This document shows positions 1-32,410 of a DNA stretch of 64,000 nucleotides, piece by piece. The DNA is from Obrimoposthia wandeli (lineage: Eukaryota). Positions within the stretch are counted from its first letter, which is position 1; the number at the start of each line of letters is the position of its first letter. The DNA lies in the NCBI GenBank assembly GCA_977020255.1, contig CDROCS010000289.1, positions 558,001-622,000 of the forward strand. The letters are read 5' to 3'. Under the pieces are notes generated by a model. That model was not told the origin of the DNA, did no database searches, and was given only the letters and a program-made list of their open reading frames with translations. A program made the translations under genes and the position numbers.

Positions 1-1085
1 TATATCAAATTCTGGTGCCAAAACAAATGTGAAGAACGGGCAGCTGCTTTTAAACTCAGTGAAAGAAATACCATTGTTTATATTTTTATCTAGTTGGCCC
101 AAATTCCGAATAATAGATTGCGTATAAGCCAAAGCATAAGCGTTACCTTCGAAATCTGTTTTATATGTTTCGCGATAATCAGTATTTCTTGAAAGTATCA
201 CTGAACCTACATTAAGATTGTCAAATTGAGTTGCATCTGTCGTATAATTTCCTAGAAACTTTGCAGTTTTTTGAAAAGAAATTAAAATGAATTTCGGTAA
301 TCTTACATCACCAAAATTTGATCCTTATTAAAAGCTTGTGTACCCGTACCTAAAGAGTAGGATATAAGTTTAGTTTCTCTAATAGGATAACAAGCATTGT
401 TTTTTCCCATTCCTATATTATGTGCCATTAAAACTGATTGCTCGGTTTTAACTCTTCGGACATACAATTTTGCATCCAAAATATCAAGTCTAGGTTTTAG
501 AACGTCTGTGCTTATCAAAGAAAAATTCCATTTATTACGTTTCAAACGAAGATGTATATTAACACCGGGAATTAAATATTTCGGTTGTTCAAAGAAATTC
601 AATCTCAAAGACCCACACATTTCGTAAGCTTTAGAACCTGCAATTCATTCTTTGCGAGTTGCATCAGTTGTATCATAACCAATGGTTGCCAAATTAGTAT
701 TTTGAGTATCAGTACTATAATTCAAGAGACTTTCAATCAAAGCTTTATGAGCATAAGAAGAATTTCCACCTTCAATTTTGACATTATTAAGAGTAACAAT
801 GGCATCACTAAATAAAGAATTAAAGAGATAATTTACAGGTGTTACATCTGCATTTTCATCTAAATTAGTACCATCCCGATTTAATACTTTTATTTGAACA
901 TAAAGCAAAGTATCATTCAAATCTAAATACTCGCTATTGGAACCATTAATATTAAATTCTAAATCGGTTAAAGTGGTTCCTGAAACTGAGTTAACTAGAA
1001 ATATTTCTTCAAAGGAAGCATTATCTACAACTACTTGTGGAAGCGGTTTATCAAAAATACACAATTCTGTTTTGGCGCAACTCAT
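1..1085 (-). pseudogene. Polinton double-jelly-roll major capsid protein (PY/hexon-like), disrupted as sequenced, C-terminus outside window
   Basis: CAKTELCIFDKPLPQ..., LEFNINGSNSEYLDLNDTLLYVQIKV, PVNYLFNSLFS, YAHKALIESLLNYS, LIPGVNIHLRLKRN match the Polinton MCP pattern. ORFs 645-1085 and 303-620 are in frame across a TGA at 645-647 (RKE*IAGSK, likely Trp). A 1-bp deletion in the A4 run at 313-316 shifts to GDVRLPKFILISF...FFTFVLAPEFDI, which is open to base 1. Confidence 0.92.
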
Positions 1086-1459
1086 TTTGCAAATATTGTT
1101 CCTTCAACTTTCTTACGTTTGTTTATATTGATTTTTTGCTTCTTTTTACTTTTAAATCCACTACCTCCTTGGCTTTTATTTGATTTACGTTTTCTAATCA
1201 AATTAGCAACTTCAGGTAAAACATTATCAAGTTCATCAAGCACATGCTTCTTAAAAGTTGGTATTAGTTTATTGTCTTTAGATGAAAGGTAATCCTTTCC
1301 TACTTTTGATATAAATCGCCCGAGTCTCTTTAAAAGAGGAAAGGCAAATATACCTAATGTTTTAAGCCAGCCAGATCCGTATTGTTTACCAACAAAATAT
1401 GGTAATTCTCCACCTTGTTGGCTTTGACTATAAGCTTCATTTATTGCTGGATTCGCCAT
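1082..1459 (-). CDS. Small basic Polinton core-like protein (125 aa) between minor and major capsid genes
   Basis: Intact ORF with the YxQxQxGGxxxYFxGxQxGxG motif typical of this position in Polintons and a Lys-rich C-terminus. A homologous relic lies at 39185-39540. Confidence 0.8.
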   Translation of the reverse strand: MANPAINEAYSQSQQGGELPYFVGKQYGSGWLKTLGIFAFPLLKRLGRFISKVGKDYLSSKDNKLIPTFKKHVLDELDNVLPEVANLIRKRKSNKSQGGSGFKSKKKQKININKRKKVEGTIFAK

Positions 1460-1460
1460 T

Positions 1461-2501
1461 TTATTTTCTTGAATGTATTGTTAAACTTGTCTTGGCCCCG
1501 TACGTGAAATCTATTAGTTGTCCGGAATCATCTCTAATATTTACTTCAATATTGTTTATAGAAAAGAGAGAAACTGGAAGATACATTGGTTGATCTATAC
1601 ACATACCGACAGCGTCCCCATCTCTAGTTTCATTTTTAGATATCCATATTGTTCTCAAAAGTGGAACTCGCTGTCCTCCTACAAGCGCTGGTTCTATTAA
1701 ATTAGTATAAATATATATATGATTAACAGCATTTAAAAGTTTTGCCTTATTTTTAGCTTTTATGGTTTTTATTGTATGGGTTTCAAATTTATTTCTGTTT
1801 AAACCAAGGTTTTTAGCGAGTTTATCATCAAATAAAACTCGTATTATATTGCTCTTTTCTGTAAACGTTATTTTACCATTTTTTAATGTTACACATTTAT
1901 CGAAATATTCACTACATTCCTTCTGTATTAATTTACAGAAATTCACTTCACTATCTAATTTATAATCTTTTGAAAACATTTTCAGTTCCACTACATACTT
2001 TTGTCTCGTTTCAACTAAAAACACTTTTGTTACTTTATCAGGAACATTTTTAAACGATTTAGATGAGGCTATATCAGATCTCTTCATACCTACTACATGT
2101 CCACTGTCAAAACCAAATTTATGAGCTTCTCTATCAGATCCAAATATAAGTTGAATAGGTTTTAAAAAATGTTTTAGTCGATTTTTAAATCGGACTTTGT
2201 TTTTTTCATATATTACTTTCACTTCTTTATCTATACAATTGTAATAGAATTTTCCTTTACTATCAAACCCAATCACAACTTCGATTGATTTTTCATGATC
2301 AACTTCTTTTGTAAACGAAATATGTGAGTTTTTTCTGATAGTAATTGGAGAATAATAAAAGGAAAATTCTGTTAAAGCAGCTTCCCATTCTCCTTTGAGA
2401 TTTATAGGATTTTCCAAATCAATAATAAAGCTACTATCGTAATTATCTGGTTGAGTCTTCGGACATCCGTTACTAGGTAAAACCATATACATAGATTTCA
2501 T
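1461..2501 (-). CDS. Polinton minor capsid protein (PX/penton-like, 346 aa)
   Basis: N-terminal MVLPSN..P.N..SSFIIDLENPINLKGEWEAALTEFSF; C-terminal IYIYTNLIEP..VGG..VPLLR, PMYLPV, IEVNIRDDSGQLIDF. Confidence 0.92.
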   Translation of the reverse strand: MKSMYMVLPSNGCPKTQPDNYDSSFIIDLENPINLKGEWEAALTEFSFYYSPITIRKNSHISFTKEVDHEKSIEVVIGFDSKGKFYYNCIDKEVKVIYEKNKVRFKNRLKHFLKPIQLIFGSDREAHKFGFDSGHVVGMKRSDIASSKSFKNVPDKVTKVFLVETRQKYVVELKMFSKDYKLDSEVNFCKLIQKECSEYFDKCVTLKNGKITFTEKSNIIRVLFDDKLAKNLGLNRNKFETHTIKTIKAKNKAKLLNAVNHIYIYTNLIEPALVGGQRVPLLRTIWISKNETRDGDAVGMCIDQPMYLPVSLFSINNIEVNIRDDSGQLIDFTYGAKTSLTIHSRK

Positions 2502-3520
2502 ATTATATTAGATGCTGATATCCAAGTTGGATCTGAAAAACCATGCCATTTAACATAGTATTGTTTATGTTTACCGGCACCCTTAGATTTTAATATTTTT
2601 TGAATACGGAAAACGCTAGGTTTATTTGATATTACTTGTAGTTCTTGCTCGTAAAATTTACCGTGAACGATATTATTGTCAGCATCTTTAATAGTATACA
2701 TTATTGGATTACTCTTTTGATCAATTTTACTTATACAAAATATTTCATCGCTCCAATTCTGATCAAAGTTTTTAATAAATGGAGTAGAGCTAATTTTCGA
2801 AATTCGGACATATTCGTTTTTCTTATATTTAGCTTGTTTAATATTTTCTATTTTATTCCTGTTCATCCAAATATCCTTAGAATTTTTATTAGTAACATCA
2901 ACAGGTCTCATTCCCATGAGACCTCTATGTTCCGAGTGATTATAGGCATGTATTATTTTAGGTAAAACTTGGATCCATTTTTTATTTCCTTCTTTTGTGA
3001 AATACTTTTTTATTCGATCTCTTAAAGTACGATTAAATCTTTCTACTACTGCTTTATACTGTGAAAACACAGAGTAGTGATTTATATTATTTTGTTTAAA
3101 TAAAGATTGAACTTGCTTATTATAAAATTTTGTCCTAAATCAGTTTGCACATCTTGTGGAATGTCCTCTTTTAATATTTCGTTAATGGCTTCAAGCATAG
3201 CTATTGAAGACTTTGCTTTAACTGGAATTGCACGAGCAAACCTGCTAAATACATCAATACATGTTAAAATATATCGATATCCCTCTTAATGGAAGAATAT
3301 GGAATCATCTCCATCAAATCCATTTGCCATAAATTATTAGGACCGCTGGTTTTGTAAGCTCTAGATGGAAACCTTCTTCTCATCGGTTTGTTCAGACTGT
3401 AGACTAACTGGTTGCTCAGCCATTTCTGCGTTTTCTTGTATTTTTGTTTTGTTCTTTTTGCTAATTTTGAAACTCCGGTGTAGCCAATTGGATCTTTTGG
3501 TTGAACCATATCTTCTCCAT
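2498..3520 (-). pseudogene. Retroviral-like (rve) DDE integrase with C-terminal chromodomain; three 1-bp deletions as sequenced
   Basis: Repaired reading (~341 aa): MEKIWFNPKDPIGYTG...WQMDL...YILTCIDVFSRFA...VQTDLG.EFYN...KAVVERFNRTL...YYVKWHGFSDPTWI. D, D and E are all present. Frameshifts near 3499-3500, 3286 and 3128. The relic at ~41340-41390 confirms the WFNxKD frame. Confidence 0.93.
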
Positions 3521-3606
3521 TACAACAATTTGAATAGAAAGAAAATTTAAATTTAGGTAAAGAAGGGTTAGCACCCATATCTTTAACTAATTTTATAAAT
3601 AATTGT

Positions 3607-3935
3607 TTATGAACGTGTCGCAGCTATAATACTACTGATAATTGAAGCAACAACTGGAATAACAGCCCCTATGAAACCACCATTCTGTTTAAGAATAATA
3701 TTTCGTTTCCTTTTTTTACTTTTTACATTAGCAATATCTAGAAGAGTTTTTCTATATTTCTTTAATATATTTTTCCGATGTCCAACTTTTACTCGACCCA
3801 AAACTATATTATACAAAACTTCCAATAAATCATCTACAACAAAGGATGGAAATGCTTTAAGAATAATCATTCTCTTATGAGAAGAGGCTTTGACTAAAGC
3901 TTTAAAATAGGGTATGCTTCTTTGTATTTTCTCAT
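3607..3935 (-). pseudogene. Conserved small basic Polinton ORF ending in QNGG plus an amphipathic helix (109 aa when repaired)
   Basis: ATG at 3935; a 1-bp deletion at 3921-3923 is needed to join MRKYKRSIPYFKALVKASSHKR to ORF 3607-3870 (...LLEVLYNIVLG...KQNGGFIGAVIPVVASIISSII). Second copy at 47168-47480. Confidence 0.8.
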
Positions 3936-3979
3936 TTTAATAAAAAAAGGTTCAATTTAAATATAGTTTATATTCCAAG

Positions 3980-4108
3980 CTATTTAAGTTTTTTTTTATT
4001 TCTAACTACAGATTTGATTAATTTTTTCACTTCTTTTTTCTTAATGATTATTTTTTTTGATTTATTAGGCTTTGCTTTACGTTTTACTATCAACTTCGTA
4101 AAAAGCAT
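3980..4108 (-). CDS. Very basic micro-ORF (42 aa, 17 Lys + 2 Arg), putative DNA-condensing core peptide; not in the ORF track
   Basis: MLFTKLIVKRKAKPNKSKKIIIKKKEVKKLIKSVVRNKKKLK*. The homologue at 47510-47660 reads MPFKKLIVKRK...KLIKSVVRSKIKLKWLQI*, so TAG 3980-3982 is probably a mutated Trp codon. Confidence 0.65.
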   Translation of the reverse strand: MLFTKLIVKRKAKPNKSKKIIIKKKEVKKLIKSVVRNKKKLK

Positions 4109-4115
4109 TATAAAT

Positions 4116-4763
4116 TTATATTTTATGATTGTTCTCTATTTGTTTATAAACAGTTACTTCCTTAGAATTAAATATGTCGGTTAAAACACGTAAATCATCT
4201 GGGCAAGCTTGTGTAAAGTCAATAAATATATACCCATGTGCTTGTTTAGCAGCATCGTGGAATGAATCAACTAGAAAGTTCTTATTTTGGGGAAATGCCT
4301 GTCTGGCCACGAAATCAACAACTGTTTGATCTCTAGGATTTTTAAATAAAACTAAGTTATGTACATTAAGATTTCTAGTTCTATGGTGACCTCCTTGGTG
4401 AAAAAGATTTTGAGTGATAAATATAACTGTTACTTCACGATGTCTTGCAATCTTCGTAAATAAATTATTAAAGTCTGATTCCTTGTTAGCTTCCTGATAC
4501 AAATCATCAATTATTATTACATCTTCTTTTTTCAATCTTTCACACCAATTTGCATCAAATCCTTCAATAAATTGTATTCCCTTCAACTTGCAAACTTCTG
4601 TTTTGGTTAATCCGCTTTCCCCTCCTCCACCATGATGCCAATAAATATTTTTGAAACTAGATTTGAAAAGAGATTCATTTTGCAACAATTTACATACGAA
4701 ATGTGTCTTTCCACTTCCACTGGGACCAACTATTTGAAATACAGCATTATTATTTAGCTCCAT
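4116..4763 (-). CDS. A32/FtsK-like genome packaging ATPase (215 aa)
   Basis: Intact ORF; Walker A GPSGSGKT, Walker B VIIIDDL, FTKIARHREVTVIFITQN motif. Confidence 0.95.
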   Translation of the reverse strand: MELNNNAVFQIVGPSGSGKTHFVCKLLQNESLFKSSFKNIYWHHGGGGESGLTKTEVCKLKGIQFIEGFDANWCERLKKEDVIIIDDLYQEANKESDFNNLFTKIARHREVTVIFITQNLFHQGGHHRTRNLNVHNLVLFKNPRDQTVVDFVARQAFPQNKNFLVDSFHDAAKQAHGYIFIDFTQACPDDLRVLTDIFNSKEVTVYKQIENNHKI

Positions 4764-4801
4764 TGCATATAGTCTTTCATTTTTTAATGTTGTTTATGTT
4801 A

Positions 4802-5074
4802 TCATAGAAGTTTCCTTATTGAAATGTATAATGTTAGAGCTATTGTAGATGAAATACAAAAATTAATTAATGAATATTTGGCTATAATTTTATTTATTTG
4901 TGTACGATTTCTAAATTCTCGAATAACGTGTGATCTAACCAATATTTCAATGTTATCTCTTGTTATATCATTATTTTTTAATTCTGATAAAATTTCTTTA
5001 CCCCTACTTTTTCCAGAAAATATTTCGTCGGCAAGCCGATCCACTTCATTGTCTCTATTTATAGTATTATTCAT
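4802..5074 (-). CDS. Hypothetical 90-aa protein with a C-terminal hydrophobic segment
   Basis: First ATG at 5074 (the track start at 5083 is TTG). C-terminal YSLINFCISSTIALTLYISI is followed by RK. Packed between the TBP-like and ATPase genes. Confidence 0.6.
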   Translation of the reverse strand: MNNTINRDNEVDRLADEIFSGKSRGKEILSELKNNDITRDNIEILVRSHVIREFRNRTQINKIIAKYSLINFCISSTIALTLYISIRKLL

Positions 5075-5102
5075 TTGAAACAATAAGTTTAAACGGGTTT
5101 GT

Positions 5103-5599
5103 TTATAGAAAAGATAACAAGATGTAATAAGATATATTTTCTAAAATCAAATCAACAATGTTTGGATAATCAAAATTTTTCAATCCCAATATCATAACTT
5201 TACCACTGGAAAATATATTCACACATAGCGGTTTAAACTTCAAATAACTGAGAGCAGGAAATATTTCTGGTTCAAACATGCATTCTTCTTTCATTTTCTA
5301 TGGAGTTTTAAAAAGATTTATCAGTTTCCCAAGATTAGCTGAAATCGTGATTGATTGTATTGCAGTGATTTGAATTCCAAATGGTAAATTGACCCCAAGC
5401 ATTGGTATTTTGCATCCCATAACACGACAATTTCCTAAAAGAATTCAATATGGAAATAAAAAAACTAACCTGTAGGAAAAATAACAACTGTGAAATTGTC
5501 AAACCTTTCCACATATTGTCTCGGCTTCCATTCATTGAATGATAAGTACGAAACATCATCTTCTGTTCTACCTTTATAATTTAGATTTACGAGTTTCAT
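5103..5599 (-). CDS. TATA-binding-protein-like gene, 2 exons (5470-5599, 5103-5434), 153 aa; a compensated +1/-1 pair creates a TAG at 5298-5300 as sequenced
   Basis: Spliced product: MKLVNLNYKG...FTVVIFPTG|NCRVMGCK...IQSITISANLGKLINLFK(LHRK)MKEECMFEPEIFPALSYLKFKPLCVNIFSSGKVMILGLK. Both TBP repeats align to the canonical ALIFSSGKMVCTGAK and QNMV...YEPELFPGLIYRM..P..VLLIFVSGKVVLTGAK. Exons sum to 462 nt = 154 codons. Confidence 0.85.
5435..5469 (-). other. 35-nt GT-AG intron in the TBP-like gene
   Basis: ACAG|GTTAGT...TTCTTTTAG|GA. Removing it restores the frame and the IFPT-G-NCRVMG motif with no gap. Confidence 0.8.
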
Positions 5600-5815
5600 T
5601 ATACTAAAATTGTATTTTATAAAATCTTCTTTATATATGTCTGAACCTGCTTTTTTATGGCACGTTTCTTGTAATTATCTTGCAAACCTATTATAATTGG
5701 ATGATATATTTAGTCCAATCAAATTCAATGCTTTTGTTATAGTAACCAATAAGATTCATGTTTTTGTTAGAAATCAGTATAAAAGAATGCGCCATTGGAG
5801 TACAAATCACAATAA
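5600..5815. promoter_or_regulatory. Divergent promoter region between the TBP-like gene and gene A
   Basis: TATATAAAG (minus, 5629-5637), TATAAAAG (plus, 5778-5785), and CCAAT/ATTGG at 5696, 5715, 5746 and 5794. Partly conserved in the relic at 56495-56590. Confidence 0.55.
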
Positions 5816-6305
5816 ATGCATTCATATCAAAGACAATTATCAATGATGGACGATAGCCAACGGATATTAAGCTGTGACGAAGATTTAGAAATGTTTGAAG
5901 AATCGGGTAATGATATGTATGAAGAAGTGAAGCAATATTTCAAATACAAAGTCAGATTCTTGAAGAAGGCTCAACTGATTGCTTTAGTAAATCCATTGAA
6001 AATTGAAAGAAGAAAGTTCAGTTATTATCTATCAAATATTCAAAAAACAGATTTTCAATTTCTTAAACAGAAAGTTGAAAAGGCAGTTCCAAATTTTACT
6101 TTTAAATAAGAACGAATTTTATATCCAAGGAGCCGATGCAGCATTTCTAGATGACTATAGAAGAGAAATATATGTTGATGCGTTTCCGAAAAAGAAGCAA
6201 TGGACTGTAACAATTCGACTTTATGGTTACAAGAAAGATCATATCCCTATGTTTAAATTTTTTTCTTTCATTTTGCATGTAATAAATTGTAATCGGTTTT
6301 ATTAA
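5816..6305 (+). pseudogene. Maverick accessory gene A (~162 aa repaired), paralogue of gene B, function unknown
   Basis: ORFs 5816-6109 and 6003-6305 join after removing one A at 6104-6106. The relic at ~56670 reads PHYIFDKNEFYI in one frame, confirming the junction. Confidence 0.75.
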
Positions 6306-6421
6306 TTTTTACTATGTTTCTTTCATTTGACAATTAATAATCAGTTTTATTTTTCATAATATTTGTATCTAATATGTTTTTTTTATAAACATAGTTTTTT
6401 AATCAGTTTCCTTATTTTAGA

Positions 6422-6832
6422 ATGGATCCTCTTCTGAGATATGTAGGAAATTTTTATTATCCAGAAAGAATTTCAAAAGGAAAACTATGTAATACATTAA
6501 AGAGGCATCAAATTATACGAGTTATGAATCCTGTGAAAATATCAAAAGTGGAGAATAAATATCTCGTCGAAATTTTAACAACATCTGATATTGATCAATT
6601 TAAAAATATTTTGGGATTTTATATTCCTGATTACGTATATGAAGGAAATTATTTCCAGCTTGAAACTGATCCCAGTCTGGCTTTTAAAGATGAACTAGAA
6701 TATTTGATTGCTCCAATTTTAGATGAAGAACTATGGAATATCTCAATACGTATCAATGGATATTTTGCTGATGACGTGAAAATGCAACCTCTTTGGACTT
6801 TGAGAGAAGCCAATATGTTGTTTTATGTTTGA
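6422..6832 (+). CDS. Maverick accessory gene B (136 aa), function unknown
   Basis: Intact ORF; homologous relics at 22940-23200 and 57010-57060; aligns end to end with gene A. Confidence 0.8.
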   Translation: MDPLLRYVGNFYYPERISKGKLCNTLKRHQIIRVMNPVKISKVENKYLVEILTTSDIDQFKNILGFYIPDYVYEGNYFQLETDPSLAFKDELEYLIAPILDEELWNISIRINGYFADDVKMQPLWTLREANMLFYV

Positions 6833-7089
6833 TTTAATAAATGTTTTGAAAATAATTTTGACTCGTATTTTGTTTTTCTCCTGTAAATTATATAGATCTG
6901 AAATATTTTTTCTCCTATAAAACTGACCTAGATAATCTAGACCGTGTAGTAATCTAAAATATTTTTTCAAAATAGTAGTAATATATTATTTGAAATCTCG
7001 TCTGCGATCAGCCGCCTGGGTCAATATGGATTCCCGTGGTCTTCAATAATCACCTTTAAGATTAGCGGTAAAATTTAAAGTGAAATAAA

Positions 7090-10689: not shown

Positions 10690-12244
10690 TGTTAGGATTA
10701 GGATTTTTATAATTTTTGAATATAATTATTTATTTATAAAAGAAAATAAAACCTTAAAACAAGGTTAAAAAAAATAAAATTGAAATATAAATTAAAATTA
10801 AATATAATAAAATCAAAAAAGTATTTTAGGACCTTGAAGAGGCCAAGTGTTAAATGCGTTATATATAAGAAAGTTGTAATAAAATAAAGGGGCCCAGAAA
10901 TTTACCAGTGTAGAAACCAAGAACGAAAATTAACAAAGAAAAGCTGAAGAGGAAAATCAAATAACAATAATTCTGGAAAATTAATTGAAATCAATTCCGC
11001 TGCTGAGAATAAAGCAACTGTTGGCCACTAAGTGCACAATTCGAGGAGATTCGCAGACACCATCCATTACGACTGGGGACAAACGACTGGGGACAAACGA
11101 CTGGGAACAAAGCAACCGTCATCGTAATCGAGGTAAGAATTACTTAACTTCCATTAAGCTAATTGTTTCCTTTTCAGATATAATTGTATAAAAGCAAGAA
11201 GAAGAAATTTGGAACTATATACGAAGTCATCGCTACACAGACAAGAAAATTGAACTTTACAAGAAAATTGAACTTTGATTCAAGCAACGAAGGTAAATTA
11301 GACCAAATTGATTTACAACCTAAAACTTAATCAGGATAATTGATTTACAAATTCGCTCGGAACAGCGGAAGGAAACGTCTAGTCAGAAGGTCAGATATCA
11401 ACTGGAACAGATTGGAGTGGGCAAACCTGAGAAGCCAAGGCAAGAGACTCAAATCAGGATTCTGTGGACCTACCGGAGGATAAATCAATCTATTAGGAAG
11501 AGGTAAGAAGTCGTGGAGTGAATTAAAGTACTGAAGATATATTTGAATTTTGTAAAATTGTTGCTTCACACAACTGAATTAAAGTACTGAAGATATATTT
11601 GAATTGTGTAAAATTGTTGCTTCACACAAGTGAAAGAAATTTAAAAGAAACTGATTTTTAGTAAATTTAATTAAAAAAGAAATTCAAAAGAGACTGAATT
11701 TTAGTAAATTTGATTTCCAGTGATTGGGATAAGTTGTACTCAAGTAATCTCGAGTACGGTTATTTTCGTACATCCGGATTTTGGGCTAAAACCTTAAAGT
11801 TAAAACAAAATTCACCGAACTTAGAAGCTTCTAAAACTATTAGATACGATTAAAATCGATACGTTAAGACATCCCCATTTGTGTGAAGTTGAGTGAAGTA
11901 GTTAGGACTAATTGTTGTAATTTTTAGGAACCTAGTTAGAGTGAGTTTAGAAAATAAAGATTTCCTACATTATATAGTGTTGTCTTGAACGAACTCTTGC
12001 AATCAGGTCAGAACCAACCCTCCATACATTACACCACACTAAGGGATATTTTCCAGTCTCCGTGTACACAACTCTTTCCACATCTCCACAACACAGATTA
12101 AAAACGGAACCTTACGATTAGAAATTGAGACAGTAAGAACATCTAAATAGGCCACGAACAACTGCAAGCCCTATTGCTATAGAACTCAATTTGGGAGCCT
12201 CTATCCGAGGATCTATTTAAGAGTTTCAAATAGAAAACCCAACA
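10690..12244 (+). mobile_element. Long solo LTR (1555 bp), probably Gypsy-type
   Basis: TGTTAGG...CCCAACA termini; 4-bp flanks CAGT/CATT (one mismatch); TATATAAG at 10862-10869; AATAAA at 11953. The 3' block is homologous to the LTRs at 25380 and 43745. Confidence 0.75.
11519..11629. repeat. 56-bp direct tandem duplication inside the LTR (also 3x ACGACTGGG(G/A)ACAA at ~11069-11110)
   Basis: TGAATTAAAGTACTGAAGATATATTTGAATT.TGTAAAATTGTTGCTTCACACAA x2. Confidence 0.9.
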
Positions 12245-13249
12245 CATTGAAGCACGAACCAGAGCCAATGTTATTATGTCAAATATATGACATTACATCT
12301 GTAAAATCTGTATAGCATACGCCATTCCTTGCTGCCTAAGACTAATTCCAGTTAGCTATTCTCCATAGCAGGGTTCTTTCCTTGCTAAAATTGGTTATTA
12401 TAATGCTTTGAATTTATCGACTACTAACCTCAAGTTCTTCATTTATTTAAACCTCAACTTATTTTGAAACTTACTTCCCTTCAAATTAATTTTATTTAAT
12501 CCATTTTCTTAACCTTCAAGTATTTATTGATTCATATTTTAATTTCGTAACTCAACATCTTTCTATCAAGAAAAAGTTTTAAAATGTCTTTACAAATGAT
12601 TAATCAGTTTACTTAAGTTGCATGAAAATAGTTAAACATTTATTTCTGACTTTATTGTAACTTGATGTTCTTTTGATCTTATTTTATTAGAGTAACTTAC
12701 TGTTTCTGAATAATAATATTTGAATTAGTTAGTTTTGCTTTCTTAAGACATTATCTTTCGAGAACTAGTTAACTATGAATTAGTTTAGTTTTTCATAAAT
12801 AAAATTCGGGAAAAGATGTGTGCTCAAAATCAGGAAAAAAGTCTTTAAAAACCTCATAAAGCGCTCTAAAAATGTAGAATTAAATATAAAATAGATTATA
12901 TTAAAAAAAACTTATAAATTGCAATATGATCAGTTTAGAAACCCCTAATAACTATACATATCGCCATTTCACGCATGCTTAACGGTTTCAAGTTAGAGCA
13001 TCCATTAAACAAAAGAATATACTTCAGAATATTTTCAAAATGATTAAGACTTACACTAATCTTTTATTTAATAATTTTTGAAGCCGTTAAATTTCAACTT
13101 TATTTATTGAATTCGTAAAAAGCACTTTATAATCCAGTGAGGGAGAACTTAAATTAGATAACTCGTGTATTAGAGTAATAATAACGCTCTTATGTTTGTC
13201 TTCATGATTGCTCACCAGAAAATTCGGTATTAAAATCAAGTACAACGTA

Positions 13250-13600
13250 TATTGCACTGCCAGGACGGTCTCATCCACCATAGAATGGTTACTGTCAAAT
13301 ATGGAGTAATGATATATTTTATTTATATTCAATTTCCCTATTTTATATCTTCTACATATGATAAAATGGAAAAGATACAGAGAAGATTAGCATGGTACCT
13401 GCAAAAGAATGACACGCCATATAATGAAGCATTCTATATTAAAAAAGTTTTGTTGTTGAAATGTTCAAACAAAGTGACCAGAATCATATTCCAATTAAAG
13501 AAAAATGTTGATACAAGTAAACATTTGATAAAGCTCAATTGGCTACCGAACAAAGCCTTAAATTCAAGATCCTACTTATAATAATTGGATTCTTTCTAAA
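13250..13600 (+). mobile_element. Degenerate non-LTR retrotransposon (L2/CR1-like) RT C-terminal relic
   Basis: GLIHHRM...YG, MEKIQRRL and LIKLNWLP resemble the L2/CR1 tail motifs (LxxLQxR; LxxLxWLP). Confidence 0.55.
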
Positions 13601-13699: not shown

Positions 13700-14600
13700 G
13701 TAACAAACAGAGTGAAGGCAAATTTCTTTACAAAAATTTACTGATGAATGTAAGAAACTGTAACAATGTTGAAAATGCGAAAAGTAGCCAACAACTTTAC
13801 TTTTCAGAAAAGAATACAAAAAACAGAAAGTGCTCTATATTCAGTAATATATAATTGATCTATAGATATTATCGATATATAAATTTGTTATTAATGCTTT
13901 ATTTTTAAAACACAGAGAAAACTCAGATATTTTTAAGATTTTGTAAATTTTAATTGCTAGTTTATATTGCAGACAATGTTCATTAGACATTGTTTAATGA
14001 TTAATCTTTATTTATTCGTTTCAAATTTCCAATAAGGCTAATATTACAATTAAATAATTAGTCAAATTAATAAAATTTCAGCTTTCAGTCATTAATATGG
14101 AGGTTACATAAAACAGAACATATATCAGAAATGTTAAATGTAACAAAATATTAGCAAGCAACAAATAACTCTTATTAATATGTAACACAGTGAAAAATAC
14201 AATACTGATGTCTCAGATGAAAAATATTTATAATTTATAAAATTTTAAAAATAATGTAAAAATAAACTTGTAAGATCACATTAGTCTAGCATTAAAATAA
14301 AATGTTAAAATATTTTTATTAAAGTAGATTTCATTTTATAAATGAACATGTTATTTTTTTAACCTAAACTATTACATATTATGGTATGTATTTATTTTAA
14401 GGATATAGCAACAATAGCAATAACAAATTTGATATTCATTTTTCAAGAGTGTTTCCTGTTTTCCATTATTCTTCGTAATATTTTCTGAATAGTGAAGTCT
14501 TCATTTGCTTTTTGATATTTTCAACATTCTTACAGTTTCTTATAATCATCAGTAAATTGTTGTAAACTTTCAGAGCATTTTTATATGTTTATTTTTTATA
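13700..14600. repeat. ~140-bp interspersed repeat in inverted pair (13700-13835 minus; 14450-14600 plus); further copies at ~28220-28330 and ~36245-36400
   Basis: Shared core TTCTTCGTAATATTTTCTGAATA...TTTTCAACATTCTTACAGTTTCTT...ATCAGTAAATT, recognised by eye. Confidence 0.6.
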
Positions 14601-15389: not shown

Positions 15390-16570
15390 GGTTTTACTAT
15401 TTGGATAGTCTACTTTTAGGAGAGGTCATATATTATATGTAATTAACAGTATCGTTTAGTTATATTATAATACAGTTGATGGGCTCTTGAAATAAATCTA
15501 GTTTGCTCAACGCTTTTAATACACTCAGTATCATAAACTTTCGGGTACGCCTCATGTGTAAGATTGTTTCTTCCCACACCTTTTGTTCTCATTGAACATG
15601 TGTTATTAGATGCATGTAAACTATAGCATTTAGGGCGTAGAAAAATACAATCATCATACGAAACCTGACCCTCACTTTCATCCTTAAATTTCTCGATAAT
15701 ATCCTTTAAACTCATAGAGTGTAGAGGATGGTTAACGGGATATTTATGGGTATCAAGTAAGTTATATCTAAACCTTTCCGGTAATAATTGATTATCTAAA
15801 CTAACATTTTTACATTCTATAAAGAAATAGTCAGTGTCCCCAGCTACGATTTTGATCTCACAATTGAATTGTGGCGATATTTATCTAATTCTATATATTG
15901 AAGCTCGTACATTCTGAGTTTGGAAATATCTAAACCGTTTGATCTATATAACTCGGTTGATCGAGACAAATACTCTGGTTTTCTTGTTTCATCAGCTTGT
16001 CCTTCTTCTTCCGGACTGTCTGCTTTTGATTTGATGCAGTATTGATTTTTGCATCCACGATAGTTTCCGGTCCACCGGTAATATAGGAGCAGCCTCTTCC
16101 AGCATCTCCTTCACTTGCTCCACCTGATCGGCTTCCTATGTGAATAATTAAATATATTTTCTAATTTAAAATATTTTACCTAATATTATCTAGATACGCC
16201 AGATATCGGAGCTTACTCCTTAACACGTCCTGACTGCATTGACTCACTAATATTTTTGAGTGCATCTGGATATAAATAATTACACGGAATTTTTTTTTCA
16301 CGTCTGACAGGGTGCGTAAAATATTATATTGCGACTTGGGGAATTTCATAAGCTAAAAGCATCGTAGGGTCCTGCTTGAAATCACTTTTGTATCTATGCA
16401 CTTAATCTTCGGATTTCAGTTCGCCATCTTGACTACTGCTCTTATGCAGTTGAAAAGCATGCATATGTTTCAGGACATGTATAGATTTTTATACACCCAC
16501 ATGCACGAAATTTCACTCTATATACATTCACCTTCTACATACATAGAATAAACATTATTATAAATTTTGT
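15390..16570 (-). mobile_element. Internally deleted Maverick relic: opposite terminus and promoter fused to a pPolB C-terminal fragment
   Basis: TIR core at 16490-16570. pPolB motifs ICLDQPSYI..TVLDISKLRMY, IVAGDTD, YPVNHPLHS, KFKDE, FLRPKCYS, RTKGV at ~15390-15990. Confidence 0.85.
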
Positions 16571-22190: not shown

Positions 22191-22445
22191 TTATATATTC
22201 GGAATTAATCTGCAGAAGTTTGAAAAGTTGAATACAAGTGACTTCTCGACATCTTTGATTTTTACTATGGAACAGCTTGCTTATGTCTTAAATTTACGTT
22301 TTTTAATCCGGCATTGCCGAGAGTAGTTTAAAAGGAAATTATACTACCATGATAATTTTCTGTTTACGGGTGAAACAGAGATGAACATTTCCCTTCATCC
22401 AAGCACTATTTTTTTTCAGACATAACTTACATGTGTCGTACTTAC

Positions 22446-22721
22446 TTGAAGAACACGTATAGTGCGGCCTGATAACGCTGTTGGAGATTGGGCTGCTGGT
22501 AGAGTCAGCAGCACATCCATGACCATGTTCATAATGTTGAGCGGGAGCCAGCTCAGCGAGAAGATGAGTGCGATCATCAGTAGCATCACATTGGTGCGCC
22601 GCTGTCGTCGCTGCTCAAGGTCACGCTTTCGCTGCTGCACGTCGCCGAGAGTGCCGACCAGAGTCGCAGTTGTGGAGTTTGCTGTTGTGGATTTTGGCTC
22701 CGTACAGTTGGAGTGGTTGAT
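22446..22721 (-). CDS. NPY/NPF-receptor-like GPCR, exon with ICL3, TM6 and ECL3 (5' boundary 22721 or 22775)
   Basis: RRTNVMLLMIALIFSLSWLPLNIMN is the NPF-receptor-type TM6. Donor CAA|GTAAGT at 22445, phase 0. Two phase-0 acceptors are possible (GAGCAG|ATC or TTTCAG|AGT). Confidence 0.88.
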
Positions 22722-22939
22722 CTGCTCAGCCGATGGCCAGGTAAATACGATTAGACAGATTCTGTAAGTATTACTCTGAAATTTTGCCTATAATACGCAT
22801 CTGTGCACTACAATTTTATGAAATTATTCTGTCACATTCAAAAAAATGCTTCATTTATTTTTCATATTATTATAACAGTTTTAAAATTCTGTGAAAATAT
22901 CAAAAGTAGAAAATTAATATATATTATTAACATTTGAAC

Positions 22940-23490
22940 AAAAATTTATATTGATCAGATTAAAAATATTTAGGAATTTTCATACCTGATTACGTATGTG
23001 AAAAAGAAATGTTTAAGATTGAAGTGGATTCTAGTCTTATTTTAGAGATAATCTCAGTTATGTGATTGGTACTCATTTAGAAAGAGGCCTATGAGATATT
23101 TCATTATAGATTATTGAATACTATGTTGCTGCTGATGAAAAAACATAACCTCTTTGAACTTTGGATGATGAAAATATTGTATGTTATATTTTTGTTGATT
23201 TAGTAAATGTATTGAAATTAATTTTTGTATTATGTTTTTTTATTTCTTTAAAACATATATAAGCCTGACCTTAAAAACGATTTAAATAGTGCAATAGACA
23301 CTAAGATTTTTTACAAATATTCATTAATTTTAAGATTATACACAAAAAACATGAATTTTTATTCCAGACACATGTAAGGGCTTAAATGACATATTCTTGT
23401 TTGCCCTCCTCCACCTCAGGGGAAGGGATGGACGATGGTGGAGATTAGACTGAACAAATTCACCTCTTCATAACAATATTATACTTTCTG
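22940..23490 (+). mobile_element. Maverick relic: gene B 3' half and right terminal repeat
   Basis: Colinear, roughly 70% similar by eye, to 6585-7265. Confidence 0.8.
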
Positions 23491-26832: not shown

Positions 26833-29800
26833 TGTAATACAATCAATTAATTTTTTCTCCAAACCAAATCACTACCTGGTTCCGTGGTTGATCCCGTATT
26901 TTGTGTTTGTGAATTGTGTTTATTTGTATCTCCTTATATAAAGGCCTTCTTGTCAATCAATGACAGCTGATAATTGTTGCTGGAAATAGGAGAACTGAGA
27001 TCTGTCGCTCAATCGACAGCTGAAAAATAAAATTTAGTTTACTGCACGAAAATGTGCTTACCTCTTGAATCCTTGATTGACGTTTTTAATTAACTCTTAA
27101 TTTTCTGACTTTCTCCTTAATTAATTTTTTGTCGTTGTCCTTTTGGTTAATTAACTCTAAACTTTTATACATTTTCGCATAATACACGACCTTCGTGGTC
27201 CTCCTAATTTTTACCCTAAATTCCACTAATTTTAATTCTAAAACTTAAATTAATATTTTAATTTAATTTTCAACCTTGCTTTCAAGGATTTTTATTTTAG
27301 TATTTAATCGACTAAAATATTTAATTTTCTTAATTCTCAATCCTAACAATATGTCATGAAACAATAAACGGAAAATAGTACAATTTAAAATAAATAAAAT
27401 TCAAAAATTTTAAAATTAGTTTACTTCATATCGTACAATTTCTAAAATGAAATTATTTAACTTGTATTATCCATGTACCTTTATAATAAAGACTAAATCA
27501 GTATTAGTAATAAATATTCATTATTATAAATAACCATATCTTTAAGTTAATGATTACATTTCAAAAGTTTGGATACTAATATTTTAAAAGGTAAGAAAAT
27601 GGCATAAAGTCATAATATGACTTTATACTATTTTGATAAGCCTTTGAACTATCTTTGCATTCATCAATAATTGAAAATAATTACAGTATTGTAGATAGAA
27701 TTGGTCACTTATCAAAGTCCATAGAAACTATATAGTGATAGTTTCACTTTTGAAAACATACAAATTTGAATGTTTATAAAACTGAACCATTTTCATACAT
27801 ATTTGATCAATGGAGACCAAACGGTTCTCTGTCGATATTCCCCTTATATACTAATTATTATTTTTTAATTATTAACGTTTGTTGCATTTTCTAGTTGTAA
27901 GATCATAATATGTATATGCATATTAATATATAAACCAAATATGAACTTACATGTTTTGAGATAAATTAAATTTAATTCGGGGGCTCATTCTTTTCTCATG
28001 GCTAAGGCAAAGAAAACTAATAAATCAACTGTCCCATCTCTTGAAGTTACTACAGAATTGCATTATTTCACAATACGTCGTATTTAAAAGTATATAAGAT
28101 TAAACTTTTACCACAGTTTTGTTAGTTTTCCTTATAAATATATATTCAAGAATAATATTTGGTTTTTATCAATAAAAATAACAATAATATATTTAAAATA
28201 AATATATGATTCATTACTCAAAAGCACTTCATGTTTCTCATTATTCTTCGTAGTGTTTTCTGAATATGCTTCAGGTGCTTCTAGAACTTTCCAACATTCT
28301 TAAAAAAAGTATTCACCAAAATCAGATAATTAGAATGTTTGATTAGCGAAGTTGTTTGAGGATAAGGGTGATATTAAGGTAAAAATTAATTCTGATGTAA
28401 TATATTTATAGTAAGTATGATGATTTAATTAAAATAAATATTTAGTGTATATTGTATTTTAAATTTTATAAAATTCATTAAATGATTGTAAAAAAACATT
28501 TTAATTGACCATGGTGTTTTTTGTTGTCAACTTAATCGTTTTATGTTCCTCCAACTTCTTCTTTAGTAATTTTGTGATATACAAAATAATTTTGAAAGAA
28601 AGGTTTTTCATAAATATTATCAAGATAGTTATAAAAATCAATTACTTTTCTTTTTTTTAAGGGAAAGGCTCAAATTTACGAGATGAAATATTGTCTCTGG
28701 ACTATTAACATATGTATGAGAATAATTTTTATACCACATATAAACCTTTCAAATGTAGCTTTGGCGTCTAGGAAGACATACTGACAAATCACAATTACTT
28801 GGAGCTGATATTTCAAGAACCCTTACAATGTTGATTTAAAGAGGCAGTTTCCTATCTGTAGATTCTTTAGTAAAAATAGCTAAAATGAGTGAAATGTAGA
28901 ATTTTTATTGAGTGGGATTTAACATAATAAATTATTTGTGTTTGAGTATGCTGAAAATACTATGAAGTTCTTCAAAGACGAAAATAAAAATTGAATGTGT
29001 TCTTTTAAGATACATCTTTCTTTAAATAAAATTATTTCGATTGCCTTCGAATATATATAATATTTCTTTATTCTATGGAACACTGCAATTTATTATTTAT
29101 TTGTTTCTTTTACATAATTAGTTACTACAAACAACTTTTTCCGACATAAATGTCATTATGTTGACTTTGTAAGACAACAAAATAAAAGTTATAGAAATAG
29201 AAGGGGATGAAAAATATAGAAAATTATATACATCAAACAGAGCCCTGCAACGACAGTGGTGGGAGAAAATTGTCCCAATAATTTTATTCCTCATTGGTAG
29301 TTCTGCTTAAGTCGTATAATTTTTTAGATGGTAAAATATGGTTTTTGAAAATTTTTGGGTATTAATTATTTTAAAATTTGGATTTATTTTATAAAATACT
29401 CTATTAATATAATTTCAAACACATTTAATGTGAAAAATACTACTAATAAAATCAACAATTAAAGCCAACAATTAACAGAGCTCGAATATACTTAAAATAC
29501 TGTCTCAAACTTAATCAAGATGATGATGAATATGGGTATGGCGTTGACGTATATTACTGATACTAAAATTACCTCTATCTCGTTACCTGTTGTGGTCAAA
29601 GAAAGCCGGGCCAGCTGAGATTGAGAATTTAGTCAAAATTTACTACCAGAAATTTCTTCATATAGTTGATTGTTTCTATGTGATACTTGCGAAGGAGATT
29701 AGCTAATTTAATATTCATTATTAACGAACTATGGGGTGTGCGTGTTTGTTAGTTTTACAAAATTTCAGGTACTTTTTATAATGTAGGACTTTAATCTAGT

Positions 29801-31899: not shown

Positions 31900-32410
31900 T
31901 CCGCAATTTAGTTGTGATATTAGAATTGTTGCTGGGGATACTGATAGTTTCTTCTTGAAATGTAGAAATGTTGATGAATAAGCTCAATTGTTACCAGAAA
32001 TGATTTCTGATAAATTATTAGATACATCCAAGTAACCTAAAACTCACCCTATTTATTCAACTAGTAACACAGCCAAAGAAAAGTTTAAGAATGAAAGTAA
32101 GGGTGTTTGTACTTTTATGTATTTTCCTTCATCCAAAATGTTATAGCCTAAAAACTAGCAATGATAAGTCACATATGAGAACAAAGGGAATATTAATTAA
32201 ACATATTAATATAAAACACGAAAATTATTTAGCTGTTTACGAGACAGGTATAAGTGATCGTGTTCAACAAATTCATATTACTCCCCTTAATCACCAGCTA
32301 TATACTATGCATTTATCCAAAATAGCATTGGGTAATGTGGATGAAAAGCGGAAATGGGTGGAAAATAATTTGTCAATCGTTTATAGTCATTATCTCGATC
32401 CGGAATGAAT
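31900..32410 (+). mobile_element. Maverick pPolB C-terminal relic
   Basis: RIVAGDTDSFFL, LDTSK*PKTHPIYS, KFKNE, LHPKCYS, RTKGI, HQLYT, SKIAL...DEKR; stop at 32408. Confidence 0.85.

What the first reader, a model, noticed from the sequence alone, without database searches (positions are those of the whole stretch)
5103..5599. A Maverick/Polinton that carries its own TATA-binding-protein-like gene
Seen: after splicing, a 153-aa ORF with both TBP repeats lies inside the element, at the head of the leftward gene cluster (TBP-like, 90-aa ORF, ATPase, core ORFs, integrase, minor and major capsid). Known: the Polinton core set is pPolB, integrase, ATPase, protease, capsids and a few small ORFs, and TBP homologues are a feature of large DNA viruses (Nucleocytoviricota). 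I do not recall TBP being described as a Polinton gene, but I cannot check the literature here. Inference: the element may encode its own promoter-recognition factor to drive late (virion) genes or divert host Pol II initiation. The ORF track shows only the last 63 aa.
Basis: partly seen in the sequence, partly recalled or inferred. Interest (0 to 1): 0.92.

Follow-up and report, generated by a model that had tools for sequence, protein, structure and literature searches.

The report
Maverick element's own TBP-like gene
A virus-like Maverick/Polinton element in this genome carries a broken copy of a small TATA-binding-protein-like gene that is intact, conserved and under selection in many relatives. 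Those relatives also share a private TATA-like box in front of their virion genes, so this clade probably brings its own promoter-recognition factor.

Summary
The gene is real and lies exactly at 5103-5599 on the minus strand, at the head of a leftward Maverick gene block: small ORF, A32-type ATPase, integrase, penton-like ORF and major capsid gene, which is cut by the window start. It is not an intact 153-aa ORF. This copy has one in-frame stop and a 35-nt GT..AG interruption that no relative shares, and the element's integrase and capsid genes are also broken.

More than 80 metagenomic relatives of 144-165 aa are intact, with dN/dS about 0.2. They lie beside the same ATPase, integrase, capsid, protease and pPolB genes. 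An AlphaFold model (pLDDT 96) matches only TBPs in the PDB. The C-terminal repeat is canonical. The N-terminal half is a reduced, helix-less half-saddle that Pfam does not detect.

New here: a motif, T-ATAAAC-A-(A/T), lies 32-37 nt before the start codons of the ATPase, integrase, penton, capsid and protease genes. It is absent before the TBP-like, pPolB and 216-aa genes. I infer a two-class programme in which the TBP-like factor reads this box. Binding has not been shown.

The only precedent found is a figure label ("TBP") in the 2021 adintovirus/MELD paper. Verdict: a new variant of a known kind; interest 0.66.

The parts
5103..5599 (-). TBP-like gene, broken copy: one in-frame stop and one 35-nt GT..AG interruption (intron or insertion)
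   Evidence: Pfam PF00352 hit at 29.3 bits. Three pieces tile the family HMM over positions 2-147. Alignment A1.
5629..5637 (-). Plain TATA box (TATATAAAG) 30-38 nt before the TBP-like ATG. There is no TATAAACA here. ATTGG/CCAAT boxes lie 100-150 nt upstream.
   Evidence: None of 38 TBP-like genes has TATAAAC within 170 nt upstream.
5100..5106 (-). ATAAACA motif 32 nt before the ATG of the 90-aa ORF. Its TAA is the stop codon of the TBP-like gene.
4802..5074 (-). 90-aa ORF between the TBP-like gene and the ATPase; no family hit
4791..4797 (-). ATAAACA motif 34 nt before the ATPase ATG
   Evidence: ATPase genes in 17 of 17 loci carry the motif.
4116..4763 (-). A32-type packaging ATPase, intact, 74-81% identical to relatives
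   Evidence: Pfam Pox_A32 hit at 27.2 bits
4141..4147 (-). ATAAACA motif inside the end of the ATPase gene, 39 nt before a 42-aa ORF
3607..3930 (-). Homologue of the 98-111-aa small protein of relatives
   Evidence: tblastn, 53-66% identity
3604..3610 (-). ATAAACA motif 32 nt before the integrase ATG
2498..3578 (-). rve-type integrase with a C-terminal part like that of relatives; broken by two frameshifts
   Evidence: tblastn to PF00665-bearing genes of L003-L005; break counts
2562..2568 (-). ATAAACA motif 67 nt before the penton-like ORF. The same spacing recurs in relatives.
1461..2501 (-). 346-aa ORF, intact, homologous to the 369-aa gene of relatives. Called the minor capsid (penton) by position only.
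   Evidence: No family or fold evidence.
1553..1559 (-). ATAAACA motif 100 nt before the 125-aa ORF
1082..1459 (-). 125-aa ORF, homologue of the 102-108-aa gene of relatives
1120..1126 (-). ATAAACA motif 41 nt before the capsid-gene ATG, inside the upstream ORF
   Evidence: Capsid genes in 10 of 10 loci carry the motif.
1..1085 (-). Major-capsid-sized gene (405-412 aa in relatives), cut by the window start and broken by one frameshift and one stop
   Evidence: tblastn, 51-59% identity; break counts. The capsid fold was not tested.
75..81 (-). ATAAACA motif inside the capsid gene, on the gene strand. The gene it would serve lies outside the window.
5816..6832 (+). Divergently oriented ORFs on the other side of the TBP-like promoter. 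ORF 6422-6832 has TATAAACA (6384-6391) 37 nt before its ATG, so the element reaches at least this far.

Best explanation
Window 5103-5599 (minus strand) is a decayed copy of a gene that is a regular, selected component of one Maverick/Polinton clade. The gene encodes a compact TBP-fold protein of about 150 aa. Its C-terminal half is a canonical TBP repeat that keeps both DNA-kinking phenylalanines and the E-P-E-L/I-F stirrup. Its N-terminal half is a four-stranded, helix-less half-saddle.

The most likely function in intact elements is an element-encoded promoter-recognition factor. It would be made from an ordinary host-type promoter (a plain TATA box, and in some relatives CCAAT boxes). It would then bind a private TATA variant, T-ATAAAC-A-(A/T), placed 32-37 nt before the start codons of the packaging ATPase, integrase, penton-like, capsid, protease and small genes. 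There it would nucleate host Pol II initiation. This gives the element two promoter classes: TBP-like, pPolB and the 216-aa gene without the box, and the virion/integration module with it.

Shown: the fold, the linkage to the element, purifying selection, the motif with its rigid spacing and strand bias, and the split between gene classes.

Inferred: that the protein binds this motif, that the C-terminal repeat reads the canonical 5' TATA half while the altered N-terminal half reads the deviant 3' AACA half, that it recruits TFIIB and Pol II, and that the two classes are temporal (early and late).

The copy in this window is non-functional.
For: Fold:
- Pfam TBP hits above the cut-off in the window piece and in 12 of 12 relatives.
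- The AlphaFold model of relative P0014 has pLDDT 96.1 and pTM 0.85.
- The top 44 Foldseek PDB hits are all TBPs, with E about 1e-8, TM 0.63-0.78 and about 170 aligned columns spanning both halves.

DNA-binding and TFIIB determinants:
- E97, P98, E99, F101 and F117 are nearly invariant.
- By the offsets they map to yeast TBP 186-190 and F207.

Linkage to the element:
- The TBP-like gene lies next to A32 ATPase, rve integrase, a roughly 410-aa capsid-sized gene and pPolB in L003, L004, L005, L007 and the P0038 contig.
- The same holds in 14 JGI loci.
- Peptidase_C5 is present in L003.

Selection:
- 32 of 33 ORFs are intact, and median dN/dS is 0.225 over 43 pairs.

Motif:
- TATAAAC is the top 7-mer of 5544 tested. 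22 of its 49 occurrences fall in the -45..-25 band, against a background of 1.35% (p 3e-28).
- This was replicated in 40 independent loci: 48% of 107 occurrences lie 29-38 nt before an ORF-opening ATG, against 3-9% for control TATA-like 7-mers, and 83 against 24 lie on the gene strand.
- Column shares are T 79%, then the fixed ATAAAC, then A 91%, then A 64% or T 27%.
- It is conserved in distant members such as L047, whose ATPase is 40% identical.
- In the window it occurs 8 times on the gene strand and once on the other.

Class split:
- ATPase 17/17, capsid 10/10, penton 9/9, 102-aa 9/9, small 12/13 and integrase 9/14 carry the motif.
- TBP-like 1/43, pPolB 0/4 and the 216-aa gene 0/5 do.
- None of 38 TBP-like promoters has TATAAAC, while many have a plain TATAWA at -36..-47.

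Nuclear expression:
- A short spliceosomal-type intron is shared by six relatives in the protease gene.

Functional analogy:
- BFVD fold hits include giant-virus TBPs, an ASFV-type B263R homologue, and herpesvirus BcRF1, U58 and UL87.
Against: - No binding or expression data exist. The link between protein and motif rests on co-occurrence and structural logic.
- The motif begins with a canonical TATAAA that host TBP could bind.
- ATAAACA also fits the forkhead core (RYAAAYA). TATAAA is a minor poly(A)-signal variant, and at 29 of 85 sites the motif overlaps the upstream gene's stop codon.
- I could not test whether Maverick clades without a TBP-like gene lack the motif. L006 has TATAAACC at the same spacing, but its TBP status is unknown.
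- The first-repeat position equivalent to the first kinking Phe varies between F, Y, C and others.
- The first half lacks the helices that many TBP partners contact.
- The mapping to yeast residue numbers uses my memory of the 61-240 core construct and of the literature on E186, E188 and L189.
Confidence: 0.55

Rival explanations
1. Host TBP reads the TATAAACA boxes. The element's TBP-like protein is instead a competitor or decoy that titrates TFIIB or other TBP partners, or occupies host TATA boxes. In this way it would dampen or redirect host Pol II (or Pol III) transcription, or evade host TBP regulators, during element replication.
For: - The box starts with the canonical TATAAA.
- The stirrup residues that contact TFIIB in cellular TBP are nearly invariant.
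- The N-terminal half lacks the convex-side helices. These helices are docking sites for several TBP regulators, which is established knowledge and was not tested here.
Against: - A decoy does not explain why the box keeps an invariant C and A after TATAAA across members as far apart as 40% ATPase identity.
- It also does not explain why the TBP-like, pPolB and 216-aa genes avoid the box.
- The saddle keeps both kinking Phe of the second repeat and one of the first. This points to real DNA binding.
Confidence: 0.2
2. The conserved box is not a promoter for a TBP-type factor at all. It would be a 3'-end/poly(A) signal of the upstream gene, or a forkhead-type site. The TBP-like protein would then bind something else, for example the element termini, for replication or packaging.
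For: - At 29 of 85 sites the upstream ORF stops inside the motif, and at 26 more it stops just after it.
- ATAAACA matches the forkhead core, and TATAAA is a known minor poly(A) signal. Both points are from established knowledge.
Against: - The spacing is rigid to the downstream ATG, with a mode of 32-37 nt.
- 24 of 85 sites have no upstream ORF reaching them.
- First genes of a block, such as the MATH genes in L005, carry the box at -34.
- The TBP-like, pPolB and 216-aa genes would also need 3' ends, yet the split follows the downstream gene.
Confidence: 0.12
3. The element behaves like a virophage. The box would be the late promoter of a helper giant virus, and the TBP-like protein would work with that virus's transcription machinery rather than with host Pol II.
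For: - Virophages and polinton-like viruses are known to copy their helper's promoter motifs (papers listed).
- Giant viruses encode TBP-like proteins, which are the best viral fold matches.
Against: - Element genes carry short spliceosomal-type introns shared among relatives, which argues for nuclear expression.
- The element has its own pPolB and integrase.
- The window's host has rhodopsin-type GPCR exons and so is probably an animal.
- No IMG/VR contig encodes the family.
Confidence: 0.06
4. It is a one-off captured host TBP pseudogene with no role in the element.
For: This particular copy is broken. A second, older copy of the element in the window has no TBP-like gene next to its ATPase.
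Against: - More than 80 relatives exist, all with PF00352, and 55 representative clusters score E <= 1e-30.
- The position beside the ATPase module is syntenic.
- dN/dS is about 0.2.
- Structural identity to cellular TBPs is only about 20%, and the nearest canonical TBPs are a mix of archaeal, plant and ciliate proteins.
Confidence: 0.01

Closest known systems
Cellular TATA-binding protein (TBP, Pfam PF00352) and its paralogues (TBPL1/TRF2 type)
   Same: Saddle fold. The second repeat has the full strand-helix layout, both kinking Phe and the stirrup motif. All top PDB matches are TBPs.
   Different: - It is about 150 aa against a core of about 180 aa.
- The first half has four strands and no helices, and sequence models do not detect it.
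- Identity is about 20%.
- It is encoded by a mobile element and has no N-terminal tail.
TBP-like proteins of Nucleocytoviricota (for example the Heterosigma akashiwo virus and mimivirid TBPs, and the ASFV B263R type)
   Same: Virus-encoded TBP-fold proteins, and the best viral structural matches, with E 4e-8 to 1e-4.
   Different: Those viruses bring their own RNA polymerase, and their TBP-like proteins are longer (190-550 aa). Here the carrier is a Maverick of about 15-20 kb with no polymerase subunits, so host Pol II must be used. Identity is 9-19%.
Beta/gamma-herpesvirus late-gene vTBP (BcRF1 / ORF24 / UL87) with TATT-type late promoters
   Same: This is the closest working analogy. A virus-encoded TBP mimic reads a variant TATA box that marks late (virion) genes and recruits host Pol II (established knowledge). 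There is weak fold-level likeness: BcRF1 at E 2e-3, plus U58 and a UL87 domain.
   Different: There is no sequence relationship. The herpes proteins are large (440-1000 aa) and act in a six-protein complex. The box differs: TATT against TATAAACA. The likeness is in working principle only, not in family membership.
Promoter mimicry by virophages and polinton-like viruses (mavirus with CroV late promoters)
   Same: A small element of the Polinton realm with one short conserved motif in front of most genes (papers listed).
   Different: There the motif belongs to a helper giant virus, and the element encodes no TBP. Here the element encodes the candidate reader itself, and its genes carry nuclear-type introns.
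The 'TBP' gene label in MELD-virus maps of Starrett et al. 2021 (PMC8502044, Fig. 5; preprint 10.1101/697771, Figs 5-6)
   Same: A TBP-like gene drawn in a midsize linear dsDNA virus with Polinton-type PolB. A 'TRAF' gene is labelled too, as in L005 and L007.
   Different: It is only a legend entry, with no analysis of fold, distribution, selection or promoters. I could not see the figure, so I cannot tell whether it is the same clade.

Membership tests
TBP (PF00352) superfamily | Significant match to the TBP repeat model | tested here: met
   Window C-terminal piece: 29.3 bits, above the cut-off of 22.9. 12 of 12 relatives match, best E 7e-18. PDB profile hits to TBPs down to E 2.5e-22.
TBP (PF00352) superfamily | Two tandem repeats, each with five strands and two helices, forming a ten-stranded saddle | tested here: not met
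   The model of relative P0014 has a complete second repeat, but its first half has only four strands and no helices. Pfam and PDB profiles match only the second half. The overall saddle still superposes on TBPs at TM 0.63-0.78 over about 170 columns. It is therefore a reduced variant of the fold.
TBP (PF00352) superfamily | Two pairs of DNA-kinking phenylalanines (yeast F99/F116 and F190/F207) | tested here: inconclusive
   The second-repeat pair is nearly invariant: F101 and F117 map to yeast 190 and 207 by the offsets. In the first half, F40 is nearly invariant, but the other position varies between F, Y, C and others. The mapping of the first half rests on repeat analogy only.
TBP (PF00352) superfamily | C-terminal stirrup residues that bind TFIIB (yeast E186, E188, L189) | tested here: met
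   E97 and E99 are nearly invariant, and position 100 is L or I. They map by the offsets. The residue roles come from the literature as I remember it.
TBP (PF00352) superfamily | Binds TATA-type DNA in the minor groove | not testable with these tools
   Only indirect evidence: the conserved TATA-variant box in the same elements.
Maverick / Polinton | [quoted passage not shown] | tested here: met
   PF03175 genes in L003, L004 and L007, and tblastn hits in L010 and L019. None is in the window itself. Its expected place lies beyond the window start.
Maverick / Polinton | Retrovirus-type (rve) integrase | tested here: met
   PF00665 genes in relatives. The window homologue at 2498-3578 is broken by two frameshifts.
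Maverick / Polinton | A32/FtsK-type packaging ATPase | tested here: met
   Window 4116-4763 hits Pox_A32 at 27.2 bits, above the cut-off of 22.8.
Maverick / Polinton | Adenovirus-type cysteine protease | tested here: met
   L003 11656-12012 hits Peptidase_C5 at 24.1 bits, above the cut-off of 21.3. The gene lies outside the window.
Maverick / Polinton | Double jelly-roll major capsid and single jelly-roll penton proteins | tested here: inconclusive
   Assigned by size and position only. There were no Pfam, PHROG or PDB sequence hits, and the single-sequence model of the window ORF failed with pLDDT 31.
Maverick / Polinton | Long terminal inverted repeats and a target-site duplication | tested here: inconclusive
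   No convincing terminal repeats were found in the partial loci. One end of the window element lies outside the window.
Herpesvirus vTBP (BcRF1/ORF24/UL87) | Sequence or strong fold homology to the UL87 family | tested here: not met
   Only weak fold matches, E 2e-3 to 2.5e-2. It is an analogy of working principle, not membership.

The most novel reading that the evidence does not exclude
This Maverick clade runs a self-encoded, two-tier transcription programme. A minimal TBP paralogue is made from a host-type promoter. It then switches on about ten virion and integration genes through a private TATA variant (T-ATAAAC-A-W) at a fixed distance from each start codon. Its canonical C-terminal repeat reads the TATA half, and its stripped-down N-terminal half reads the deviant AACA half. 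This would be the first matched pair of transcription factor and promoter described for Polintons. It would also be a natural minimal TBP with altered box specificity.
Probability: 0.45. Interest if true: 0.8.

Novelty: new variant of a known kind. Interest (0 to 1): 0.66.

Why it matters
Mavericks/Polintons are usually described as a replication module plus a virion module that depend wholly on host transcription. A conserved, selected TBP-fold gene and a clade-wide private core-promoter box that separates two gene classes would mean these elements control the timing of their own gene expression, as large DNA viruses and herpesviruses do.

This gives an annotation handle for the clade: the box predicts gene starts and strand. 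It provides a natural example of a TBP reduced to about 150 aa. It also yields a hypothesis that public transcript data and structure prediction can test.

For this window itself the finding is modest. The copy is a pseudogene in a decaying element.

Tried and rejected
- Alternative genetic code as the explanation for the in-frame stop: rejected. Element and other ORFs end with all three standard stops, and TGA-only ORFs are no better.
- A second TBP-like copy in the window: none was found with the family HMM on all six frames. The second Maverick copy loses similarity just upstream of its ATPase.
- The search for related loci with alignment A1 failed because it had no conserved stretch. It was repeated with A2. 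IMG/VR gave nothing.
- Host identification: no protein names or organisms for any relative. The one NCBI record (GCA_013332715.1, JAAUYG01) was not found in the literature and is probably a metagenome. The only clue is rhodopsin-type GPCR exons.
- Terminal inverted repeats in relatives: none convincing.
- Capsid identity: no Pfam, PHROG or PDB sequence hits. The single-sequence AlphaFold model of window ORF 1464-2501 was useless, with pLDDT 31, so the third fold search was not used.
All tests used the pieces separately or intact relatives.

Slips, stated as required:
2. My first notebook entry and the output give the bounds of the pieces I searched with. This amounts to placing the breaks of the TBP-like gene.
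Full report
**1. What is at the coordinates**

On the minus strand an ATG at 5599 opens a reading frame that ends with TAA at 5103-5105. The frame is not continuous. It is interrupted once by a 35-nt stretch with GT..AG ends, and it holds one in-frame stop.

The window uses the standard code. ORFs end with TAA, TAG and TGA, and TGA-only reading brings no gain. The stop is therefore a real break.

The last 63 aa hit Pfam TBP (PF00352) at 29.3 bits, above the cut-off of 22.9, with E 7.5e-7. An HMM built only from relatives matches the three pieces of the stretch at profile positions 2-43, 43-85 and 89-147, with E 2e-11, 1.5e-13 and 6e-26. The whole gene is therefore present and colinear.

All 34 aligned relatives are continuous where the window has the 35-nt stretch, and all have a residue where the window has the stop. 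Short GT..AG introns of about 45 nt do occur in this element family, so either an intron or an insertion is possible.

**2. The element**

tblastn with the genes of related contigs shows that window 1-5600 (minus strand) is colinear with them. The order is as follows.

| Gene | State in the window |
|---|---|
| TBP-like | one stop and one 35-nt interruption |
| 90-aa ORF | open |
| A32-type ATPase (4116-4763) | intact, 74-81% identical to relatives |
| small ORF | open |
| rve integrase | two frameshifts |
| 346-aa penton-position ORF | intact |
| 125-aa ORF | intact |
| capsid-sized gene | one frameshift and one stop, cut by the window start |

pPolB is not in the window. In relatives it lies beyond the capsid and protease genes.

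A second, older copy of the same family lies at 39177-41541 plus 47088-48347. Its likeness ends just upstream of its ATPase, and it has no TBP-like gene. Further fragments are scattered through the window.

Rhodopsin-type GPCR exons suggest an animal host. The species could not be named.

**3. Relatives**

- The C-terminal piece found three metagenomic proteins at 59-64% identity.
- One of these then found 83 proteins, all with PF00352 and mostly 144-162 aa long.
- A profile search of 1.84 billion representatives gave 55 clusters at E <= 1e-30 and 759 at E <= 1e-10. Full-length single-stretch matches mark the family, and two-stretch matches mark canonical TBPs.
- Contexts were read in five ENA contigs and 40 JGI loci. 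Wherever enough flank is present, the gene lies in a Maverick, next to A32 ATPase, rve integrase, a roughly 370-aa gene, a roughly 410-aa gene, Peptidase_C5 and pPolB (PF03175).
- Three arrangements occur. In most loci the gene is upstream of the ATPase on the same strand. In L029, L044 and the P0038 contig it is divergent from the ATPase. In L032 and L038 it follows the capsid gene.
- IMG/VR holds none.
- 32 of 33 ORFs are intact, and pairwise dN/dS has a median of 0.225 with a range of 0.05-0.445 over 43 pairs.

The gene is thus a selected component of the clade, not a stray capture.

**4. The protein**

AlphaFold on relative P0014 with alignment A1 gave pLDDT 96.1 and pTM 0.85. Residues 63-149 form a complete TBP repeat of five strands and two helices. 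Residues 1-50 form four strands with no helix.

The top 44 Foldseek PDB matches are all TBPs from human, yeast, plant, microsporidian and archaeal sources. They score E about 1e-8 and TM 0.63-0.78, over about 170 columns at about 20% identity.

Sequence profiles see only the second half. The best hits are archaeal TBPs (2z8u and 1mp9, 82 bits), ahead of eukaryotic ones at 63-74 bits. The nearest canonical TBPs in the large library are a mix of archaeal, plant and ciliate proteins. I therefore see a deep, separate lineage and cannot name a donor.

E97, P98, E99, F101 and F117 are nearly invariant. By the offsets they map to yeast TBP 186-190 and 207. These are the TFIIB-contacting stirrup and the two kinking Phe of the second repeat; the residue roles come from the literature as I remember it. 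In the first half F40 is nearly invariant, while the other Phe-equivalent position varies.

The best viral fold matches are giant-virus TBPs, with weak matches to herpesvirus BcRF1, U58 and UL87.

**5. The promoter motif (new here)**

Reading the 90 nt before each gene showed a recurrent TATAAACA.

In four ENA loci, TATAAAC and ATAAACA are the top two of 5544 7-mers for lying 25-45 nt before a called start. The counts are 22 of 49 and 23 of 65, against a background of 1.35% (p 3e-28 and 1e-26). The sharp mode is at 31-36 nt.

In 40 independent JGI loci, 48% of 107 TATAAAC occurrences lie 29-38 nt before an ORF-opening ATG. Control 7-mers TATAAAT, TATAAAG and TATAAAA reach 3-9%. 83 occurrences lie on the gene strand against 24 on the other.

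Column shares around the anchored ATAAAC are T 79% before it, A 91% after it, and then A 64% or T 27%, from 96 distinct sites. The box persists in distant members such as L047, whose ATPase is 40% identical. In the window it occurs 8 times on the gene strand and once on the other within 1-6000, each time upstream of an element ORF.

The count of genes with the box within 130 nt upstream splits by gene class.

| Gene class | Loci with the box |
|---|---|
| ATPase | 17/17 |
| capsid-sized gene | 10/10 |
| penton-position gene | 9/9 |
| 102-aa gene | 9/9 |
| small gene | 12/13 |
| integrase | 9/14 |
| protease, first part | 6/9 |
| protease, second part | 3/4 |
| TBP-like | 1/43 |
| pPolB | 0/4 |
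| 216-aa gene | 0/5 |

None of 38 TBP-like promoters has TATAAAC. Many have a plain TATAWA at -36 to -47, and 13 also have ATTGG/CCAAT boxes, the window's among them. The MATH/TRAF-like genes of L005 carry the box at -34, so they are element genes.

**6. How it most likely works**

Shown: a TBP-fold protein under selection, encoded by the element; a clade-wide TATA-variant box at a fixed distance from most virion and integration genes; two promoter classes; and nuclear-type introns in element genes.

Inferred: the TBP-like protein is made from a host-type promoter and then binds the box and nucleates Pol II initiation on the second class. In TBP-DNA complexes the C-terminal repeat covers the 5' half of the box and the N-terminal repeat covers the 3' half (established knowledge). 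Here the canonical repeat faces the canonical TATA half, and the altered half faces the deviant AACA half. This fits, but it is not evidence of binding. I put this explanation at about 0.55.

Rivals:
- Host TBP reads the box, and the protein is a decoy or competitor (0.2).
- The box is a 3'-end or forkhead signal, and the protein binds something else (0.12). The upstream ORF stops inside the motif at 29 of 85 sites. However, the spacing is fixed to the downstream ATG, and 24 sites have no upstream ORF.
- The box belongs to a helper giant virus (0.06).
- The gene is a one-off captured pseudogene (0.01, refuted).

**7. Literature**

Full-text searches for Polinton, Maverick or polinton-like together with TBP or TATA found one relevant item. 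Starrett et al. [quoted passage not shown] Promoter motifs in virophages and polinton-like viruses are known as copies of giant-virus promoters. I found no report of a TATAAACA box or of a factor-promoter pair in Mavericks. Subscription journals are not covered.

**8. Verdict**

The window's copy is a pseudogene. The family behind it is a new variant of known kinds (virus-encoded TBP-like factors, and Mavericks), with a testable mechanism. Interest is 0.66.

**9. Slips**

Noticed in passing
window 39177-41541 and 47088-48347 (minus-strand genes): A second, older copy of the same Maverick family, 78-87% identical in DNA to 1099-4797. It is split by about 5.5 kb of other DNA, and its ATPase has frameshifts. 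Likeness ends just upstream of its ATPase start, and no TBP-like gene is detectable.
   Followed up: partly
window 15452-15952 (-) and 31907-32393 (+): Homologues (40-52% identity) of the 216-aa gene that sits next to pPolB in relative L003. These are further Maverick fragments. No pPolB was detected anywhere in the window.
   Followed up: partly
window 5708-6877 (+), with copies at 56490-57051, 22869-23239 and 62601-62985: The ORFs divergent from the TBP-like gene belong to a repeat family with four copies in the window, at 70-75% identity. ORF 6422-6832 has the TATAAACA box 37 nt before its ATG, so they are probably element genes of unknown function.
   Followed up: partly
window 13343-13443 (+): U6 spliceosomal RNA gene: Rfam RF00026, 72.4 bits, full length.
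   Followed up: no
window 33678-34142 (-) and 22419-22787 (-): Exon-sized ORFs with rhodopsin-family 7TM receptor similarity (7tm_1, 40.2 and 24.6 bits). They suggest an animal host.
   Followed up: no
relatives L003-L005, L007, L008-L047; window 5100-5106: At 29 of 85 sites the TAA inside the TATAAACA box is the stop codon of the upstream gene, so gene end and next promoter overlap. In the window this is true of the TBP-like gene.
   Followed up: yes
L003 ~11640-11700, L004 ~12350-12420, L005, L007, L010, L019: A short (about 45 nt) GTAAGT..TAG intron directly after the start codon of the adenovirus-type protease gene, shared by six relatives. Similar leader introns are seen in other small genes.
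   Followed up: partly
L005 854-1858 and 5476-6447; L007 7923-8912: MATH/TRAF-like genes lie upstream of the TBP-like gene and carry the element's box at -34. They are accessory element genes, matching the 'TRAF' label in the MELD-virus paper.
   Followed up: partly
L007 1-2937: A Ty3/gypsy-type retrotransposon (RVT_1, RNase H, rve) flanks the Maverick, so that metagenomic contig is eukaryotic chromosomal DNA.
   Followed up: no
window 13727-13823 / 14469-14566; also 28209-28302 and 36250-36377: A small inverted repeat pair of about 98 nt at 80% identity next to the U6 gene, with two further copies. It is possibly a miniature repeat element.
   Followed up: no
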